Assembly (NCBI RefSeq): GCF_006345805.1
Contig: NW_021832262.1
Coordinates: 1-64,000, forward strand
DNA from: Octopus sinensis
Lineage: Eukaryota
DNA length: 64,000 nucleotides
Direction of reading: 5' to 3'
Below the pieces are notes generated by a model. It searched no databases and was not told the DNA's origin. It worked only from the letters and a program-made list of their open reading frames with translations. Positions 15,468-60,558 of this stretch are shown here, one piece after another (position 1 is the stretch's first letter; the number at the start of each line of letters is the position of its first letter). The position numbers and the translations under genes are program-made.

Positions 15468-16340
15468 CAGGAGTGGCCATGTGGTAAGTAGCTTGCTTAC
15501 GAACCACATGGTTCTGGGTTCAGTCCCACTGCGTGCCACCTTGGGTAAGTGTCTTCTACTATAGCCTTGGGCCGAGCAAAGCCTTGTGAGTGGATTTGGT
15601 AGACGGAAACTGAAAGAAGCCTGTCGTATATATGTATATATATATATGTATGTGTGTGTGTTTGTGTGTCTGTGTTTGTTCCCCTAGCATTGCTAGACAA
15701 CCGATGCTGGTGTGTTTACGTCCCCGTCACTTAGCGGTTCGGCAAAAAGAGACCGATAGAATAAGTACTGAGCTTACAAAAAGAATAAGTCCCGGGGTCG
15801 AGTTGCTCGACTAAAGGCGGTGCTCCAGCATGGCCGCAGTCAAATGACTGAAACAAGTAAAAGAGTAAAAGAGTAAAGAGAGACAGTAAAAAATGATTCC
15901 AGGAGTGGCCTTGTGGTAAGTAGCTTGCTTACCAACCACATGGTTCCGGGTTCAGTCCCACTGCGTGGCACCTTGGGTAAGTGTCTTCTACTATAGCCTC
16001 GAGCCGACCAAAGGCTTGTGAGTGGATTTGGAAGACAGAAACTGAAAGAAGCCCATCGTATATATGTATATATGTATATATGTATGCATGTATGTCTGTA
16101 TGTATGTGTGTGTGTATGTTTGTGTGTCTGTGTTTATCCCCCCAACATCGCTTGATAACCGATGCTGGTGTGTTTACATCCCCCATAACTTAGCGGTTCA
16201 GCAAAAGAGACCGATAGAATAAGTACTAGGCTTACAAAGAATAAGTCCTGGGGTCAATTTGGTCGACTAAAGGTGGTGCTCCAGCATGGCCACAGACAAA
16301 TGACTGAAACAAGTGAAAGAGTAAAAGAGTAAAAGAGTAA
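15468..16340 (+). mobile_element. Two tandem CORE-type SINEs sharing a 5' flank
   Basis: Both are preceded by agagacagtaaaaaa(a)tgattc; period about 433 bp. Confidence 0.9.
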
Positions 16341-16973
16341 CTATTCTATTTCTTGTAGGACACGGGACCACGTAAAAAACCCACCTGCTGCCTCTTTATT
16401 CAATGGTTCGTTAGTTAGGTCACACGCAGGTTGTCCTTGCCTCCACGTTTCTAAAGAAAACTCCGTAACTCTGCTGTAGATAACATTAACAATGTCTTTG
16501 GAATGGCTGCTAATGAATTTTCCCCTGTCTCTTCCATTTAAACGATGTTTTGCCGATTAAAAATAGACACGCAGTTGTTTAGTTTGATAACCATAACTTA
16601 CTATTAATAAAATCACCTGTAAAAATTGTTCCAGTAGTAAAAGTTATAAATAAATAAATGCTAACAGGCCTCGAGTTATGAGCAATGTGTATTATTTTTA
16701 TACATCCGGCATTTTGTCAAGAAGTCGATCAGGTAGCCAAATGGAAAACTGCCAATTGCTGTGTTTTTGTTGCTTCAGAACGAGGTACTGTGTGTTTTTT
16801 GTGCGCGTTGCTTACCTCAGAGCTGGAGAGATATTTAAGTTATACAATGCTACGTTTACGATCTAATAGCAACGTAATTATTACTTTACAACAAACACAA
16901 AATTTCAAACATTTACCTGAAAAAAAAAAACACCTTCATTGAAACCAGTTGTGTTTTAATTGTTCATTTACAG

Positions 16974-17708
16974 CAGTGCTTTTCAAACTTTTTGCTGGAG
17001 CGGAACCCCAAGGAAGCATTCCACTGGCTCGAGGAACCCCTGTGCAATAATTTAATAGTCTTAAGCACACATATCTGCACAGGAGAATTAAAAATTACTG
17101 CCTATTTTAGCAGTTTTGTCACTTCTTGCGGAACCCCTGGACTGTACTGTCGGAACCCTAAGGTTCCACAGAACCCTGGTTGAAAACCACTGAGTTAGAC
17201 ACAGTCAGTTAGACACTAGTTAGACCAGTGCTTTTCAATCTTTTTGCTGGAGCGGAACCCCAAGGAAACATTCCACTGGCTCGAGGAACCCCTGTGCAAT
17301 AATTTAATAGTCTTAAGCACACATATCTGCACAGGAGAATTAAAAATTACTGCCTATTTTAGCAGTTTTGTCACTTCTTGTGGAACCCCTGGACTGTACT
17401 GGCGGAACCCTAAGGTTCCGCAGAACCCTGGTTGAAAACCACTGTATTAATGTGTGTGTCTGTATGTCTTTGCATTGATTTAGATATAACAGTGCTTTTC
17501 AAATGTTTTGCTGGAGCGGAACCCCAAGGAAGGATTCCACTGGCTCGAGGAACCCCTGTGCAATAATTTAATAGTCTTAAGCACACATATCTGCACAGGA
17601 GAATTAAAAATTACTGCCTATTTAAGCAGTTTTGTCACTTCTTACGGAACCCCTGGACTGTACTGTCGGAACCCTAAGGTTCTGCGGAACACTGGTTGAA
17701 AACCACTG
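16974..17708 (+). mobile_element. Composite hAT MITE trimer (3 x 219 bp) with an 8-bp TSD ATTTACAG around the whole
   Basis: Units at 16974-17192, 17226-17444 and 17490-17708; TIRs CAGTGCTTTTCAA / TTGAAAACCACTG; repeated internal GGAACCC motifs; ATTTACAG at 16966-16973 and 17709-17716. Confidence 0.92.
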
Positions 17709-18301
17709 ATTTACAGTGTTAAGGTGTGTACCCTATAGAGTACATACCCTGCAGTGTCTATATGATGGCTGCCCCCTCGTTATCGAGTATGGCCATTGCA
17801 CGAAGCTTAACTGTTATTGGTGCTGTGATCGAATGTGACTTTTATTTGCTTTTTAAGGCTACAGCCAGCCATTCAGTTGAGACTCACAGCACCATCAACA
17901 ATCATGAACTATGTTGCTATTGTGCAATACCTGTGCAAGAAGATTTTTTTTTAAAGTGAGGAAAGGCTGTGCACTGAGTCAATCCCACTCACTAAGCAAC
18001 AGCAGCCATAATCCAAAAAGAAGAACAAGTCAACATCATCGGTAACCACTGAGCCGCAGGTTTTACGTCGGAGTTATCCCAGTTACCTGAGTTACGTTCA
18101 CCTAGAAGGATGCCCTAACTAAGGTTCATAATATATAATACTGCTCAAACTCTGCATGTTTAGCCTAACCTGAAATCTGATGGTTATTGTTGAATCATGT
18201 GGAGGAGAGGAGTTGAGTGAGGAATTGTTAACGGAGCCAAACCTTTTGGTAATGTGTCACGCCTTCTTGCACAATTCTGAATTATTTATTTGTTTGTTTG
18301 C

Positions 18302-18332
<31 letters not shown>

Positions 18333-18421
18333 TGTGTGTGTGTGTGTGTGTACATACACACAGGTATATACACACAGCTATTGCAAATATTAAAGTAATC
18401 CAATATATATTCATTACATAA

Positions 18422-18838
18422 GACAGTGAGCTGGCAGAAACGTTAGCACGCCGGGCAAAATGCTTAGCGGTATTTCGTATGCCGCTACGTTCTGAGTTCA
18501 AATTCCACCGAGGTCAACTTTGCCTTTCATCCTTTCGGGGTCGATTAAATAAGTACCAGTTACGCACTGGGGTCGATATAATTGACTTAATCTGTTTGTC
18601 TGTCCTTGTTTGTCCTCTCTGTGTTTAGCCCCTTGTGGATAGTAAAGAAATAAGTATTTCATCTGCCATTACGTTCTGAGTTCAAATTCCACCGAGGTCG
18701 ACTTTGCCTTTCATCCTTTCGGGGTCGATAAATTAAGTACCAGTTATGCACTGGTGTCGATGTAATCGATTTAATCCCTTTATCTGTCCTTGTTTGTCCC
18801 CTCTATGTTTAGCCCCTTGTGGGTAGTAAAGAAATAAG
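18422..18838 (+). mobile_element. Meta-type SINE dimer (headed unit plus head-less unit)
   Basis: 184-bp period; junction aaataagtatttc near 18653. Confidence 0.88.
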
Positions 18839-27584: not shown

Positions 27585-27892
27585 ATAATAATAATAATAA
27601 TGATAATGATAACGATAGTAACCCTTGTTTTAAGATTCTCTTTTGATGCTAGCTGGTTACACATGTCTGTGGAGTGCTCAGCCACTTGCACATTAATTTC
27701 ACGAGCAGGCAGTTCTGTTGATCGGATCGACTGGAACTCTTGTTATGGTAATCAACAGAGCACCACTTAATTACCTTATCTGTCAAACTGCTGCATTCAG
27801 CCAGAATAACTGCTCCTTCTGCAAAATCCCCATTAATCCTTTCGTTACCGTATTTCTTTTGAGATGCTCTGCTATTCTTTCAATTACTTTAA

Positions 27893-28337: not shown

Positions 28338-28341
28338 TTAA

Positions 28342-28807
28342 ATATAACAAAAAATCTAGTGAAATAACTTAGTTACCATTAAGCTAGTTTTAGGAGCATA
28401 AATTGTGACTAAGGTTTGGTGAAAGATTTTAATTCAGAACTTTCGAAAACAAGACATTTGTACTACAGAGCCAGAGGTGGTTTCAGCTGGGTTGGTATCA
28501 AAATGGTTAAGACGGGAAGAACTAGCAGAGGCTTAAGGTGTCTTCATACTTATGTATCATTCATTTTTACATCTGTTTTAACACTTTTGTTACAATGTTT
28601 CTGTTGAGAGACTCTGTGTTTCTTTCAATTAATTTTAAATGTAACAAAGAATCTAGTGAAACAACTTTGTTATTATTAAGCTAGTGTTAGGAACATAAAT
28701 TGTGACTAAGGTTTGGTGGAAGATTTTAATTAAAAACTTTTGGAAATAAGACATTTGTACTACAGACCCAGAGTCGGTTTCAGCCAGGTTGGTAACAAAA
28801 GGGTTAA
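28342..28807. mobile_element. Two copies of a second piggyBac-type MITE family
   Basis: Both end in ...aaaa(t/g)ggTTAA; same family as 59774-60558. Confidence 0.75.
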
Positions 28808-29550
28808 GAACACTCACCTCTCATCCATTCTCCACATTCTCTAACCCAATAGTTTTCAACCAGGGTTCCGCCAGTACAGTCTAGGGGTTCCGCAAGAAGT
28901 TACCAAAACTGCTAAAATCGGCAGTAATTTTTAATTCTCCTGTGCAGATATGTGTGCATAAGACTATTAAATTATTGAACAGGGGTTCCCCGAGCCAGTG
29001 GAATGCTTCCTTGGGGTTCCGCTCCAGCAAAAAGTTTGAAAAGCACTGTTATATCTAAATCAATGCAAAGACATACAGACACACACATTAATACAGTGGT
29101 TTTCAACCAGGGTTCTGCGGAACCTTAGGGTTCCGCCAGTACAGTCTAGGGGTTCCGCAAGAAGTTACAAAACTGCTAAAATCGGCAGTAATTTTTAATT
29201 CTCCTGTGCAGATATGTGTGCATAAGACTATTAAATTATTACACAGGGGTTCCTCGAGCCAGTGGAATGCTTCCTTGGGGTTCCGCTCCAGCAAAAAATT
29301 GAAAAGCACTGCTCTAACCTTTCATAGAGGTTCTTCCATGTCCTTCTTTTCAGGGTCACTAAGTGCACTAAACCATTATCCATCCAATCCAATACACACA
29401 TTTCTCTTTCACAATATCTCAGTTCTCTCTGGATTGGTTTTGCAATCTGGAACACCTCACGCTGTAAGACGTTGGCAGATTTCTTCCTTTGTGTATCTCC
29501 CGTTGCTAAGTAAACCTGTTGCTTAGCTTCTCTTCTGGCATCCCTGATAT
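28808..29550 (-). mobile_element. RTE-clade LINE internal fragment split by the hAT dimer
   Basis: Minus translation ARREAKQQVYL...EVFQIAK...WKNLYERLE continues as NVENG once the MITE and one TSD copy are removed. RTE assignment is from recall. Confidence 0.6.
28847..29311 (-). mobile_element. Composite hAT MITE dimer with 8-bp TSD CTCTAACC
   Basis: Units at 28847-29048 (internal deletion) and 29094-29311; the 45-bp spacer is the exact reverse complement of 17445-17489; TSD at 28839-46 and 29312-19. Confidence 0.92.
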
Positions 29551-43149: not shown

Positions 43150-43410
43150 TCATCATCATCATCATCATTTAACGTCCACTTTCCCTGCTAGCATGGGTTG
43201 GACGATTTGACTGAGGACTGGCGAACCATATGGCTGCACCAGGCTCCAATCTGATCTGGCAGAGTTTCTACAGCTGGATGCCCTTCCTAACGCCAACCAC
43301 TCCGAGAGTGTAGTGGGTGCTTTTACGTGCCACTGGCACGAGGGCCAGTCAGGTGGTGCTGGCAACAGCCACACTCAAATGGTGTTTTTCACATGCCACC
43401 TGCACAGGGC

Positions 43411-43465
<55 letters not shown>

Positions 43466-44262
43466 GGAAAGTGTAACCTCTCGAAAGAGCTGTTCTTCAC
43501 TCCTGCTCTAGAGCGTCGGCTGCGGGGTTACTCCGAAAAGCTCTATCTGCGACGATTTCATCTCAATCGAAGGAGAGGGGCTTTCTCCGTCCCAGTTGCA
43601 GATCCGTGGAATAAGCTGCTGGACGAGATAGTGAAGATGCCGACAACCGCTCAGTTCAAAGTCTCCCTTGACCACAAGTGGCCTGAACTCTTTGCATGAA
43701 CACCACCCTGTACATAACTCCATGTCCCCCTACATGGCCTTGCTTTTTGCTTTTTGAGCCAAAAAATTAACTAACTAACACACACATACAAAGATACGCT
43801 AATATCAAACAGTAAGAATGAGTGCTCAACAGGGCACTAGTGGATAAATATTCCTTATTTATTAACTCATGAATCATCATCATCATCATTATTTAACGTC
43901 CACTTTCCATGCTAGCATGGGTTGGACGATTTGACTCCAGACTCCAATCTGATCTGGCAGAGTTTCTACAGCTAGATGCCCTTCCTAACGCCAACCACTC
44001 CGAGAGTGTAGTGGGTGCTTTTACGTGCCACCAGCACGAGGGCCAGTCAGGCGGTACAGGCCACGGCCTTGCTCAGATGGTGCTCTTTTATGTGCCACCA
44101 GCACAGGAGCCAGTCCAGCGGCACTGGTAACGACCTCGCTTCGAATGTTTTTCATGTGCCACCGGCACAGGTGCTAGTAAGGCAACGCAGGTAACGATCA
44201 TGCTCGAATGGTGTTTTTTAACGTGCCATCGGCATGGAGGTCAGCTTGTTGCTCTGGCAATA
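43150..44262 (-). mobile_element. Two RTE-tail SINEs (about 43150-43412 and 43872-44262)
   Basis: (ATC)n-tttaacgtccactttcc-tgctagcatgggttggac tail and repeated tggcacgtaaaa-type modules. Confidence 0.8.
43466..43779 (+). mobile_element. 3' end of a CR1-clade LINE inserted in (CA)n
   Basis: RGYSEKLYLRRFHLNRRRGAFSVPVADPWNKLLDEIVKMPTTAQFKVSLDHKWPELFA* fits the CR1 C-terminal motif; (TAAC)n tail. Confidence 0.85.
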
Positions 44263-56387: not shown

Positions 56388-57052
56388 GTAAGTAGCTTAA
56401 TTAGATTTTCTAAATAATATTCCTTTCAAAACAGGTGATGCTTTAATTGAGGAAAAAATATTGTTTCTGAAAATTTTTTTATCCCGTTTTCTTAACGTCA
56501 CAAATTTTTACCTTTTATTTTCTGGTTCATTACCTTCAGAAATGGATGTAAAATGAATTAATTGATACTTGAATTCATGGTCATATCCAACCACGACCAC
56601 TACCACTAAATTAACTGCCGCTATTTTATCTTATTCTTTTGCATTGTTATTTCTGTAGTGAGTTCATTGGTAATTAAAAAATGACTGTTTTGTTTTGGTT
56701 TATCAACAATAAGTTCATGAAACGGACCTATTGTCGATATACTTCTTACCAAATGGCTGTGCCGGCATGGCTGTGTGGTAAGAAGTTTATTTCCCAACCA
56801 CATGGTTCCAGGTTCAGTCTCACTGCTTGGCACCTTGGGCAAGTGTCTTCTACTACAGCCTGAGCCAACCAAAACCTGTGAGTGGATTTGACTGAGAGAA
56901 ACTGAAAGAAACTGAAAGGCAGTGAGCTAGCAGAAATGATAGCACGCTGGGATATGCTCAACTAGTTAAGGTTACCCTCTGACAGAAAGGTATGAAGTCA
57001 AGAGGCAGCAGAAAGCCATGTTTTTACCAATTCTTAAAGAACAACGAGCAAA

Positions 57053-57472
57053 TAGGCGCAGGCGTGGCTGTGTGGTAAGTAGCTTGCTAACCAACCACAT
57101 GGTTCCGGGTTCAGTCCCACTGCGTGGCATCTTGGGCAGGTGTCTTCTGCTATAGCCCCAGGCCGACCAATGCCTTGTGAGTGGATTTGGTAGACGGAAA
57201 CTGAAAGAAGCCTGTCGTATATATGTATACATATATATATATGTATGTGTGTTTGTGTGTCTGTGTTTGTCCCCCCAGCATTGCTTGACAACCGATGCTG
57301 GTGTGTTTACGTCCCCGTCACTTAGCGGTTTGGCAAAAGAGACCGATAGAATAAGTACTGGGCTTACAAAAGAATAAGTCCCGGGGTCGAGTTGCTCGAC
57401 TAAAGGCGGTGCTCCAGCATGGTCGCAGTCAAATGACTGAAGCAAGTAAAAGAGTAAAAGAGTAAAAGAGTA
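57053..57472 (+). mobile_element. CORE-type SINE, full length
   Basis: Near-consensus. Confidence 0.92.
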
Positions 57473-57531
57473 AATTGACCTGGGGTAGGATTTGAACTTA
57501 GGACATCAAGAGATGAGACTAAATACCAATT

Positions 57532-59773: not shown

Positions 59774-60558
59774 TTAACCCTTTCATTACTGTATTTATTT
59801 CAGCTGGGTTTTAACAAAAGGGTTAATTTAATTACACATCTTAACCCTTTTGTTACTGTATTTCTGTTGAGATGCTCTGTGTTTCTTTCAATTTAATTAT
59901 AAATATAAGAAAGAATTTAGTAAAATAATTTAGTTGTCATTCAGCTAGTGTTAGGAACATAAATTGTGACTAAGGGTTTGGTGGAAGATTTTAATTCAAA
60001 ACTTATGAAAACAAAACATTTGTACTCAGAGCCAGAGCCGGTTTCAGCTGGGTTTTAACAAAAGGGTTAATTTAATCACACAACTTAACCCTTTCGTTAC
60101 TGTATTTCTGTTGAGATGCTCTGTGTTTCTTTCAATTAATTATAAATATAAGAAAGAATTTAGTAAAATAACTTAGTTGTCATTCAGCAAGTGTTAGGAA
60201 CATAAATTGTGACTAAGGGTTTGGTGGAAGATTTTAATTCAAAACTTATGAAAACAAAACATTTGTACTCAGAGCCAGAGCCGGTTTCAGCTGGGTTTTA
60301 ACAAAAGGGTTCATTTAATCACACATCTTAACCCTTTTGTTACTGTATTTATTTTGAGATGCTCTGTGTTTCTTTCAATTTAATTATAAATATAAGAAAG
60401 AATTTAGTAAAATAACTTAGTTGTCATTCAGCTAGTGTTAGGAACATAAATTGTGACTAAGGGTTTGGTGGAAGATTTTAATTCGAAACTTATGGAAACA
60501 AAACATTTGTACTCAGAGCCAGAGCCGGTTTCAGCCGGGTTGGTAACAAAAGGGTTAA
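59774..60558. mobile_element. Tandem array of piggyBac-type MITEs (one mini copy and three full copies, period 243-244 bp)
   Basis: TTAACCCTTT...AAAGGGTTAA units starting at 59774, 59841, 60085 and 60328, separated by a 14-bp spacer tttaat(t/c)acaca(t/a)c. Confidence 0.9.

What the first reader, a model, noticed from the sequence alone, without database searches (positions are those of the whole stretch)
16966..17716. Composite hAT MITE trimer that transposed as one unit, with captured spacers
Seen: three 219-bp MITEs separated by a 33-bp spacer made of AGTTAGAC x3 and by a 45-bp unique spacer. The 8-mer ATTTACAG flanks the whole trimer but no single unit. Established: hAT transposases make 8-bp TSDs. 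Inference: the outermost TIRs were used, so the trimer moved intact. The AGTTAGAC triplet looks like footprints of earlier 8-bp TSDs. The array would then grow by adding units and carry relics of earlier insertion sites, a repeat-spacer record of its own history.
Basis: partly seen in the sequence, partly recalled or inferred. Interest (0 to 1): 0.72.

Follow-up and report, generated by a model that had tools for sequence, protein, structure and literature searches.

The report
Nested composite hAT-type MITE trimer
Three copies of a small non-coding hAT-type transposon in an octopod genome have fused, with trapped bits of old insertion sites, into one larger unit that jumped as a block; this is a tidy but not unprecedented example of how transposons build mobile repeat arrays.

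Summary
Three 219-bp units (94-98% identical; 15-bp TIRs starting CAGTG) lie at 16974-17708. They are separated by a 33-bp spacer (AGTTAGAC x3) and a 45-bp spacer. ATTTACAG flanks only the whole block.

A second array 11.4 kb away (28847-29311, minus strand) is a dimer with the identical 45-bp spacer. It has its own perfect 8-bp duplication, GGTTAGAG. So unit-45bp-unit is itself mobile, and the trimer is a nested composite of a monomer plus that dimer.

Every spacer end is an 8-mer with TA at positions 4-5. This is the Buster-type hAT target signature, also seen in distant single-copy relatives. The spacers therefore look like relic half-duplications.

Unresolved: whether the AGTTAGAC triplet records excision footprints, slippage or a host mini-repeat. 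No empty site, genome-wide catalogue or transposase could be reached.

The mechanism matches maize Ac macrotransposons and hobo/P double-insertion dimers. I rate it a new variant of a known kind, of moderate interest.

The parts
16966..16973 (+). Left copy of the 8-bp target-site duplication of the whole trimer (ATTTACAG)
   Evidence: 8/8 identical to 17709-17716; has TA at positions 4-5, T at 2 and A at 7
16974..17192 (+). Unit T1, 219-bp MITE with complete TIRs; closest to the family consensus (1 private change)
17193..17225 (+). Spacer 1 (33 bp): AGTTAGAC-ACAGTC-AGTTAGAC-ACT-AGTTAGAC. It begins and ends with the same target-like 8-mer, and ACT+AGT forms a palindrome
   Evidence: period 14, 3.1 copies; AGTTAGAC occurs nowhere else in the window
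17226..17444 (+). Unit T2, 219 bp; left unit of the embedded dimer composite
17445..17489 (+). Spacer 2 (45 bp), identical to the spacer of the second array. It starts with TATTAATG and ends with AGATATAA, both nnnTAnnn, around a 29-bp TG-rich core
17490..17708 (+). Unit T3, 219 bp; the most diverged unit (7-8 private changes)
17709..17716 (+). Right copy of the trimer's 8-bp TSD (ATTTACAG)
29312..29319 (-). Left (in element orientation) TSD copy of the independent dimer, GGTTAGAG
   Evidence: 8/8 with 28839-28846
29094..29311 (-). Unit D1 (218 bp) of the dimer composite
29049..29093 (-). 45-bp spacer, 45/45 identical to 17445-17489
   Evidence: (exact string match)
28847..29048 (-). Unit D2 (202 bp). 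It has an 18-bp deletion between two GAACCC motifs, a 1-bp insertion, and a mutated outer TIR tip (CTATTG instead of CCACTG)
28839..28846 (-). Right TSD copy of the dimer, GGTTAGAG

Best explanation
This is a 735-bp nested composite of a non-autonomous hAT-type (Buster-like target) MITE in an octopod genome.

Each 219-bp unit has complete ends: a 15-bp TIR plus five same-orientation (G)GAACCC subterminal motifs. A transposase supplied in trans can therefore pair any left end with any downstream right end.

Inferred history:
1. Two units inserted 29 bp apart, at TATTAATG and AGATATAA. Their outer ends were then used together, creating a 483-bp mobile dimer that carries 45 bp of host DNA bounded by one copy of each old TSD.
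2. At a later donor site, a monomer and a copy of that dimer came to lie side by side on the same 8-bp target, AGTTAGAC. This could be double insertion or re-insertion into the element's own TSD. That junction later grew to three copies of the 8-mer.
3. The left end of the monomer and the right end of the dimer were used together. The whole trimer inserted at ATTTACAG, duplicating it.

Within each array the units have been homogenised. The likely route is gene conversion or unequal exchange, plausibly during repair of excision gaps.

Shown: the anatomy, both outer TSDs, the shared spacer, the target signature at the spacer ends, and the within-array shared substitutions.

Inferred: the order of events, the double-insertion origin of spacer 1, the conversion mechanism, and the hAT transposase.
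For: - Perfect 8/8 outer TSDs on both arrays, and none on any single unit.
- An identical 45-bp spacer at two loci with unrelated flanks and different TSDs.
- Homology between the two loci stops exactly at the TIR tips.
- TIR tip CAGTG, a 15-bp TIR and an 8-bp TSD. These fit the hAT definition quoted in PMC3517528.
- TA at positions 4-5 in both outer TSDs, in all three distinct spacer-end 8-mers, and on at least one flank of 6 of 7 independent distant relatives. The background is 9.7%. This equals the Buster-family consensus nnnTAnnn.
- Distant relatives (72-85% identity) are single units with degenerate 8-bp TSDs, 5-7 of 8 matching. The monomer is therefore the basic mobile unit.
- The (G)GAACCC motifs occur 4-5 times per unit against 0.007 expected per 219 bp. 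None of 20000 shuffles reached 4 copies. They are conserved in the relatives.
- There are four sites where D1=D2 differs from T1=T2=T3, and none supporting T2=D1 / T3=D2. Outgroups show derived states in both arrays.
- Precedents exist. hAT composites move with an 8-bp TSD. hobo and P form head-to-tail dimers with an 8-nt TSD at the junction, sometimes with extra sequence.
- No Rfam family and no Pfam domain is found in the units.
Against: - Only two loci were available. There is no empty site, no donor locus, no second trimer and no genome-wide census.
- No hAT transposase was found in the window or could be reached elsewhere.
- The family's strong target preference (roughly nnTTAnAn) makes chance resemblance between 8-mers likelier than a naive 4^-8. 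ATTTACAG and AGTTAGAC already share 5 of 8 positions.
- The dimer could be a sub-excision product of a trimer-type ancestor rather than its precursor.
- Spacer 1 does not have the simple single-TSD form expected of a double insertion.
- The ACT filler fits a symmetric hairpin. It does not fit the 1-nt-offset cleavage known, to my knowledge, for Hermes.
Confidence: 0.8

Rival explanations
1. In-situ growth. A single monomer inserted at ATTTACAG and the array then arose on the spot. After an excision attempt, gap repair (SDSA) copied units with template switches to other copies, including a dimer elsewhere, and added filler DNA. The outer TSD would then date from the monomer insertion, and the trimer never moved as a block.
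For: - Within-array homogenisation shows that recombination or repair acts on these arrays.
- Private changes are unequal (T3 7-8, T2 3, T1 1), which suggests the units differ in age.
- Filler-like short sequences (ACAGTC, ACT) occur in spacer 1.
Against: - It needs several precise template switches that each end exactly at TIR tips.
- It must also import the complete 45-bp spacer from a dimer.
- It does not explain why all spacer ends carry the target-site signature.
- The dimer locus shows that composite transposition does occur in this family.
Confidence: 0.08
2. Ordinary tandem amplification (satellite seeding). Unequal crossing-over or replication slippage multiplied a unit plus its flank, with no composite transposition. 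The flanking 8-mers match by chance, helped by target-like sequence bias.
For: - MITE-to-satellite transitions are common, also in molluscs.
- A second, piggyBac-like MITE in this window forms just such a uniform-period array.
- 8-mer matches are commoner than naive expectation in this repeat-rich window.
Against: - The two periods (252 and 264 bp) and the two spacers are unrelated, which unequal exchange of one unit-plus-flank cannot produce.
- The same spacer occurs at a second locus with different flanks.
- Two independent perfect 8/8 outer matches are very unlikely by chance.
Confidence: 0.05
3. The two loci are related by segmental duplication of host DNA, or by an assembly artefact, rather than by transposition of a composite.
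For: Both arrays lie within 12 kb of each other in a very repeat-rich region, where assemblies and local duplications are error-prone.
Against: - The flanks of the two arrays share no similarity. Homology ends at the TIR tips, and the arrays are in opposite orientation.
- Each array has its own TSD.
- Units differ by 2-7%, with private substitutions and an 18-bp deletion. They are not collapsed or duplicated reads.
Confidence: 0.03

Closest known systems
Ac/Ds macrotransposons and composite insertions of maize (hAT superfamily; Huang & Dooner 2008 as cited in PMC9910405; bioRxiv 10.1101/2020.08.10.245175)
   Same: The outer ends of two separate, directly oriented hAT elements are used together. 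The intervening DNA travels along. The composite is flanked by one 8-bp TSD, and the components can still act alone.
   Different: The maize cases are kilobases to 100 kb long. They involve Ac or fractured Ac, and were caught as fresh genetic events. Here all components are 219-bp MITEs, the cargo is only 33-45 bp, the composite is nested (a dimer inside a trimer), and the dimer form has itself spread to at least two loci.
Head-to-tail tandem dimers of hobo and P elements by double insertion (McGurk & Barbash 2018, PMC5932611)
   Same: Head-to-tail DNA-transposon copies have a TSD-length motif matching the target consensus at the junction. Some junctions carry extra sequence. The paper proposes this as the first step from TE to satellite.
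   Different: The Drosophila junctions typically hold exactly one 8-nt TSD, and the dimers are described as substrates for unequal exchange, not as units that re-transpose. Here one junction has three copies of the 8-mer plus fillers. The other junction has two different 8-mers around 29 bp of host DNA, meaning neighbouring rather than identical sites. The arrays also carry outer TSDs.
Mar and other Buster-family hAT MITEs (PMC3517528)
   Same: Short non-coding elements with short TIRs starting CAG, 8-bp TSDs and the target consensus nnnTAnnn.
   Different: There is no sequence similarity. Mar is described as single units, and its putative full-length parent was identified. No parent is known here.
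Tandem-repeat-containing MITEs and MITE-derived satellites (DTC84 of Donax trunculus PMC3879986; Xenopus miDNA4; pearl/CvA of bivalves; review PMC9659126)
   Same: These are mobile non-autonomous elements in molluscs and other animals that carry or spawn short tandem arrays. Concerted evolution within such arrays is invoked.
   Different: In those cases the repeats are internal modules between one pair of element ends. Here each repeat is a complete element with its own TIRs, and the spacers are relic insertion sites.
Bacterial composite transposons (two IS copies bracketing cargo) and IS tandem dimers
   Same: The logic is the same: two complete small elements plus the DNA between them move by the outer ends. 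A TSD between tandem copies is noted in PMC5932611.
   Different: The host kingdom and the transposase family differ, and bacterial cargo is usually genes.

Membership tests
hAT superfamily (non-autonomous member) | 8-bp target-site duplication | tested here: met
   ATTTACAG 8/8 (trimer) and GGTTAGAG 8/8 (dimer). Distant single-copy relatives match at 5-7 of 8.
hAT superfamily (non-autonomous member) | Short TIRs (5-27 bp per PMC3517528) whose tip fits YARNG (the motif is from my own knowledge) | tested here: met
   15-bp TIR, 13/15 in the window copies and 14/15 in relative L039. The tip is CAGTG.
hAT superfamily (non-autonomous member) | Target-site consensus of a hAT family (Buster nnnTAnnn or Ac nTnnnnAn) | tested here: met
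   TA at positions 4-5 in both outer TSDs, in all spacer-end 8-mers, and on at least one flank of 6 of 7 relatives. Background is 9.7%. The consensus is quoted.
hAT superfamily (non-autonomous member) | A related autonomous element encoding a hAT transposase (BED finger, RNase-H-like DDE, hAT dimerisation domain) with matching ends | not testable with these tools
   No such ORF in the window. 20 ORFs gave no Pfam hit. The host genome is not in any searchable DNA collection.
MITE | Small (under about 800 bp), non-coding, with TIRs and a TSD | tested here: met
   219-bp units. The unit ORFs have no Pfam domain and no protein relatives. No Rfam family matches.
MITE | High copy number of homogeneous copies in the genome | tested here: inconclusive
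   Five units at two loci in 64 kb. Genome-wide counts are unobtainable.
Composite transposon / macrotransposon | The TSD flanks the composite and not its component elements | tested here: met
   Outer flanks match 8/8. The flanks of each component match at only 3-5 of 8.
Composite transposon / macrotransposon | The same composite (same internal junction) present at more than one locus with different TSDs | tested here: met
   Met for the unit-45bp-unit dimer (17226-17708 and 28847-29311). Not testable for the full trimer.
Composite transposon / macrotransposon | An empty site with a single copy of the target in another allele or species | not testable with these tools
   The flanks are unique in the window. 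Exact look-ups of flanking ORFs found nothing.
Double-insertion tandem TE dimer (McGurk & Barbash type) | Head-to-tail copies separated by exactly one TSD-length copy of the target | tested here: not met
   The junctions are 33 bp (three copies of AGTTAGAC plus 6- and 3-bp fillers) and 45 bp (two different 8-mers around 29 bp). The junction 8-mers do match the target signature.
TE-derived satellite DNA | Many copies of one uniform period | tested here: not met
   Three units with two different periods, 252 and 264 bp.

The most novel reading that the evidence does not exclude
In octopod genomes, MITE arrays may be self-propagating 'mobile proto-satellites'. Units re-insert into the TSD of their own array or next to it. 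Each step traps a relic target site, and the enlarged array remains transposable through its outer ends. Repair of excision gaps homogenises the units. This would be a general route from MITE to dispersed satellite, with spacers that partly record the order of assembly. Two unrelated MITE families in this one window (hAT-like and piggyBac-like) show spacers bounded by their own TSD motif, which hints at generality.
Probability: 0.25. Interest if true: 0.55.

Novelty: new variant of a known kind. Interest (0 to 1): 0.4.

Why it matters
The finding links two known processes in one locus: neighbouring or double insertion that creates TE dimers, and macrotransposition by outer ends. It shows them acting repeatedly on a MITE, so that arrays of complete elements become mobile families of their own.

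If this is common, it offers a concrete intermediate between dispersed MITEs and dispersed satellite-like arrays in repeat-rich cephalopod genomes.

It is also a caution for repeat annotation. Dimers and trimers would be split into monomers, or merged into false 'longer families'.

The practical impact is modest. No gene or regulatory effect is shown.

Tried and rejected
- **Protein-search route to other genomic copies.** I used the ORFs that the unit happens to contain. The 63-aa forward frame and the fully open 72-aa reverse frame both gave no hit.
- **Exact look-ups of flanking ORFs.** I tried ORFs abutting the trimer and the dimer to find the same site in other assemblies. Nothing is on record.
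- **DNA pattern scans.** Viral and prokaryote-genome collections gave 0 hits. My single metagenome scan used a 17-mer that was too short. A longer, junction-specific pattern would have been the better choice.
- **Octopod DNA fetched through a SINE-derived protein hit.** The 20 kb of Argonauta hians holds no copy of the element.
- **Paralogous empty sites.** The trimer's flanks are unique in the window. The dimer's flank repeat ends before the insertion point.
- **Array of small RNA genes.** Rejected: no Rfam match in the units.
- **Coding element.** Rejected: no Pfam hit.
- **Spacer 2 as a tandem duplication of unit plus flank.** Rejected, because its two ends are different 8-mers.
- **ACT as a P-nucleotide footprint.** Considered and kept only as a weak hint. 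ACT+AGT is palindromic, but the chance is about 1 in 32, and it does not fit the 1-nt-offset hairpin chemistry I recall for Hermes.
- **Literature search for the TIR sequence.** Nothing found.

Full report
**1. Observation**

- Three 219-bp units lie at 16974-17192 (T1), 17226-17444 (T2) and 17490-17708 (T3). Pairwise identity is 97.7, 95.9 and 94.5%.
- Each unit begins CAGTGCTTTTCAAAC and ends GGTTGAAAACCACTG. This is a 15-bp terminal inverted repeat with 13 of 15 matches.
- Spacer 1 (17193-17225, 33 bp) reads AGTTAGAC-ACAGTC-AGTTAGAC-ACT-AGTTAGAC.
- Spacer 2 (17445-17489, 45 bp) has no other copy in the window apart from the second array described below.
- ATTTACAG sits at 16966-16973 and 17709-17716.
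- Flanks of individual units match at only 3-5 of 8 positions.
- The repeat finder and Tandem Repeats Finder recover the array independently.
- AGTTAGAC occurs three times in 64 kb, all within these 33 bp. ATTTACAG occurs three times in the window.
- An 8/8 match at a fixed offset occurs at 4e-4 to 2e-3 of positions in this window, and that rate is inflated by microsatellites.

**2. A second array**

BLAST of one unit against the window found two more units on the minus strand. Read in element orientation, the locus is:

GGTTAGAG | D1 (29311-29094, 218 bp) | 45-bp spacer (29093-29049) | D2 (29048-28847, 202 bp) | GGTTAGAG

- The spacer is 45/45 identical to spacer 2 of the trimer.
- The flanking 8-mers match 8/8.
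- The flanks share nothing with the trimer's flanks.
- D2 has an 18-bp deletion between two GAACCC motifs and a mutated outer tip.

The answer is yes. It also shows that unit-45bp-unit (483 bp) is a mobile entity. The trimer is therefore a nested composite of T1, spacer 1 and that dimer.

**3. What kind of element**

- The units encode nothing recognisable. There is no Pfam domain, no protein relatives in either open frame, and no Rfam family.
- An 8-bp TSD, a short TIR and a CAGTG tip fit the hAT superfamily as defined in PMC3517528. The YARNG tip motif is from my own knowledge.
- My metagenome scan returned distant relatives at 72-85% identity in unrelated eukaryotic contigs. All are single units of 194-196 bp, with TIR CAGTGGTTTTCAACC and degenerate 8-bp TSDs matching at 5-7 of 8.
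- TA occupies positions 4-5 of the flanking 8-mer in both window TSDs and on at least one flank of 6 of 7 relatives. The background is 9.7%. This is the nnnTAnnn consensus of the Buster family of hAT elements.
- Each unit has four GGAACCC motifs plus a fifth GAACCC, all in one orientation and clustered near both ends. The expectation is 0.007 per 219 bp, and none of 20000 shuffles reached four. The motifs are conserved in the relatives. I read them as subterminal transposase-binding sites; that is inference.
- No transposase ORF is present in the window.

**4. The spacers as relic insertion sites**

Suppose a composite forms from two elements that inserted separately. The DNA between them should then start with the right TSD copy of the left element and end with the left TSD copy of the right element.
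- All three distinct spacer-end 8-mers (AGTTAGAC, TATTAATG, AGATATAA) have TA at positions 4-5. The chance of this is about 0.097^3, or 1e-3.
- Spacer 2 therefore looks like 45 bp of host DNA with a TG-rich core, like the surrounding genome. It would have been caught between two insertions 29 bp apart.
- Spacer 1 has the same 8-mer at both ends. This points to two insertions at one target, or to re-insertion into an element's own TSD. McGurk & Barbash documented this for hobo and P, where an 8-nt TSD sits at the junction and some junctions hold extra sequence.

Why there are three copies with fillers is unresolved. I see three readings of similar weight:
- insertion-excision cycles that leave footprints (ACT+AGT is palindromic, a weak hint of a hairpin-derived addition);
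- slippage of a single-TSD junction (TRF sees a 14-bp period);
- a pre-existing short host tandem repeat offering two targets.

**5. How the block moved**

Use of the outer ends of two directly oriented hAT elements, carrying the DNA between them and creating one 8-bp TSD, is established for maize Ac/Ds macrotransposons and composite insertions. With complete ends on every unit, any left end can in principle pair with any downstream right end. That explains the coexistence of monomers (in the relatives), a dimer and a trimer.

The direction of change cannot be fixed, whether the trimer formed from a dimer plus a monomer or the dimer was excised from a trimer-type ancestor. Each array has derived states of its own.

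**6. Homogenisation within arrays**

If T2-T3 and D1-D2 descend from one ancestral dimer and the units evolved independently, shared differences should group T2 with D1 and T3 with D2.
- No site does so.
- At four sites D1=D2 differs from T1=T2=T3.
- Outgroup polarisation shows two sites derived in all three T units and at least one derived in both D units.
- I estimate that parallel identical mutation would yield about 0.03 such sites.

So the units have been homogenised, by gene conversion or by unequal exchange. Repair of excision gaps from a sister copy is a plausible cause, but that is inference.

Private changes are unequal: T3 has 7-8, T2 has 3, and T1 has 1. This hints that the units differ in effective age, with T1 the most recently added or converted. 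The 'record of its own history' is therefore partly overwritten.

**7. Host and context**

- A SINE-derived ORF of the window matches a protein named for Argonauta hians.
- The SINE is 93% identical over 97 bp to that genome, and 90% identical over 316 bp to an ENA contig.
- The window is therefore from an octopod cephalopod. From memory the SINE resembles that of Octopus species, which I did not test.
- A 2026 repeat annotation of O. vulgaris lists recently active hAT and MITE families.
- The window is dominated by SINEs and microsatellites. No exon was recognised.

**8. Rivals**

- In-situ growth by gap repair with template switching (confidence 0.08).
- Plain tandem amplification (0.05).
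- Segmental duplication or assembly artefact (0.03).

Each fails on at least one of these points: the shared spacer at a second locus with its own TSD; the two unrelated spacers; the target signature at all spacer ends; or the private substitutions in each unit.

**9. Limits**

Only two loci could be studied. The empty-site test, a genome-wide census, the donor loci and the autonomous partner were all out of reach. My one metagenome scan used a pattern that was too short.

**10. Verdict**

The mechanism combines known processes, so this is a new variant of a known kind, of moderate interest.

Noticed in passing
window 59774-60558 (+); related copies at 27834-27889, 28339-28508 and 28579-28805: An unrelated, piggyBac-like MITE (TTAA|CCCTTTTGTTAC...GTAACAAAAGGG|TTAA, about 230 bp) forms a head-to-tail array of three full units plus one internally deleted unit. 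Every junction is TTAA-TTTAATYACACAWC-TTAA (period 243-244). The spacer is again bounded by the family's own TSD motif, but here it is uniform, as in satellite-type amplification. Older copies (86-88% identity) lie directly beside the hAT-like dimer.
   Followed up: partly
window, many sites, e.g. 18470-18700, 15569-15877, 56975-57505: A tRNA-derived SINE-like repeat is scattered through the window and produces recurring pseudo-ORFs (…ASFSFRLPNPLTR…RRHLPKVPRSGTEPGTMWLVSKLLTTQP…). It matches an Argonauta hians protein and genome (93% over 97 bp) and an ENA metagenome contig (90% over 316 bp). This identifies the host as an octopod.
   Followed up: partly
L101, L039=L013, L050, L046=L010, L103, L058 (JGI Ga01877xx contigs) and L120 (Ga0126339): Single-copy relatives of the unit (72-85% identity, 194-196 bp) occur in metagenome contigs that share nothing else with the window. 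They lack a 23-bp internal segment (unit positions about 72-94) that the window family has. The source organisms are unknown.
   Followed up: partly
window 28847-29048 (unit D2): An 18-bp deletion lies exactly between two GAACCC subterminal motifs (…CGGAACCC[TAAGGTTCCGCAGAACCC]TGG…). This is a microhomology-type deletion. The outer TIR tip is mutated from CCACTG to CTATTG, so this end is probably no longer usable.
   Followed up: no
window 16974-17708: The unit length (219) and both spacer lengths (33, 45) are multiples of three. One reverse frame is open through a whole ancestral-type unit. No coding signal, Pfam hit or protein relative was found, so this is probably coincidence.
   Followed up: partly
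window 16060-16130 and 18294-18388: (GTAT)n/(TG)n microsatellites give sub-threshold Rfam matches to mir-297, mir-466 and others (56.6 bits or less against gathering scores of 85-90). These are low-complexity artefacts, not miRNA genes.
   Followed up: yes
window 43211-43696 (+): An ORF ending …RRRGAFSVPVADPWNKLLDEIVKMPTTAQFKVSLDHKWPELFA resembles, from memory, the C-terminal tail of a LINE ORF2. It has no Pfam hit.
   Followed up: partly
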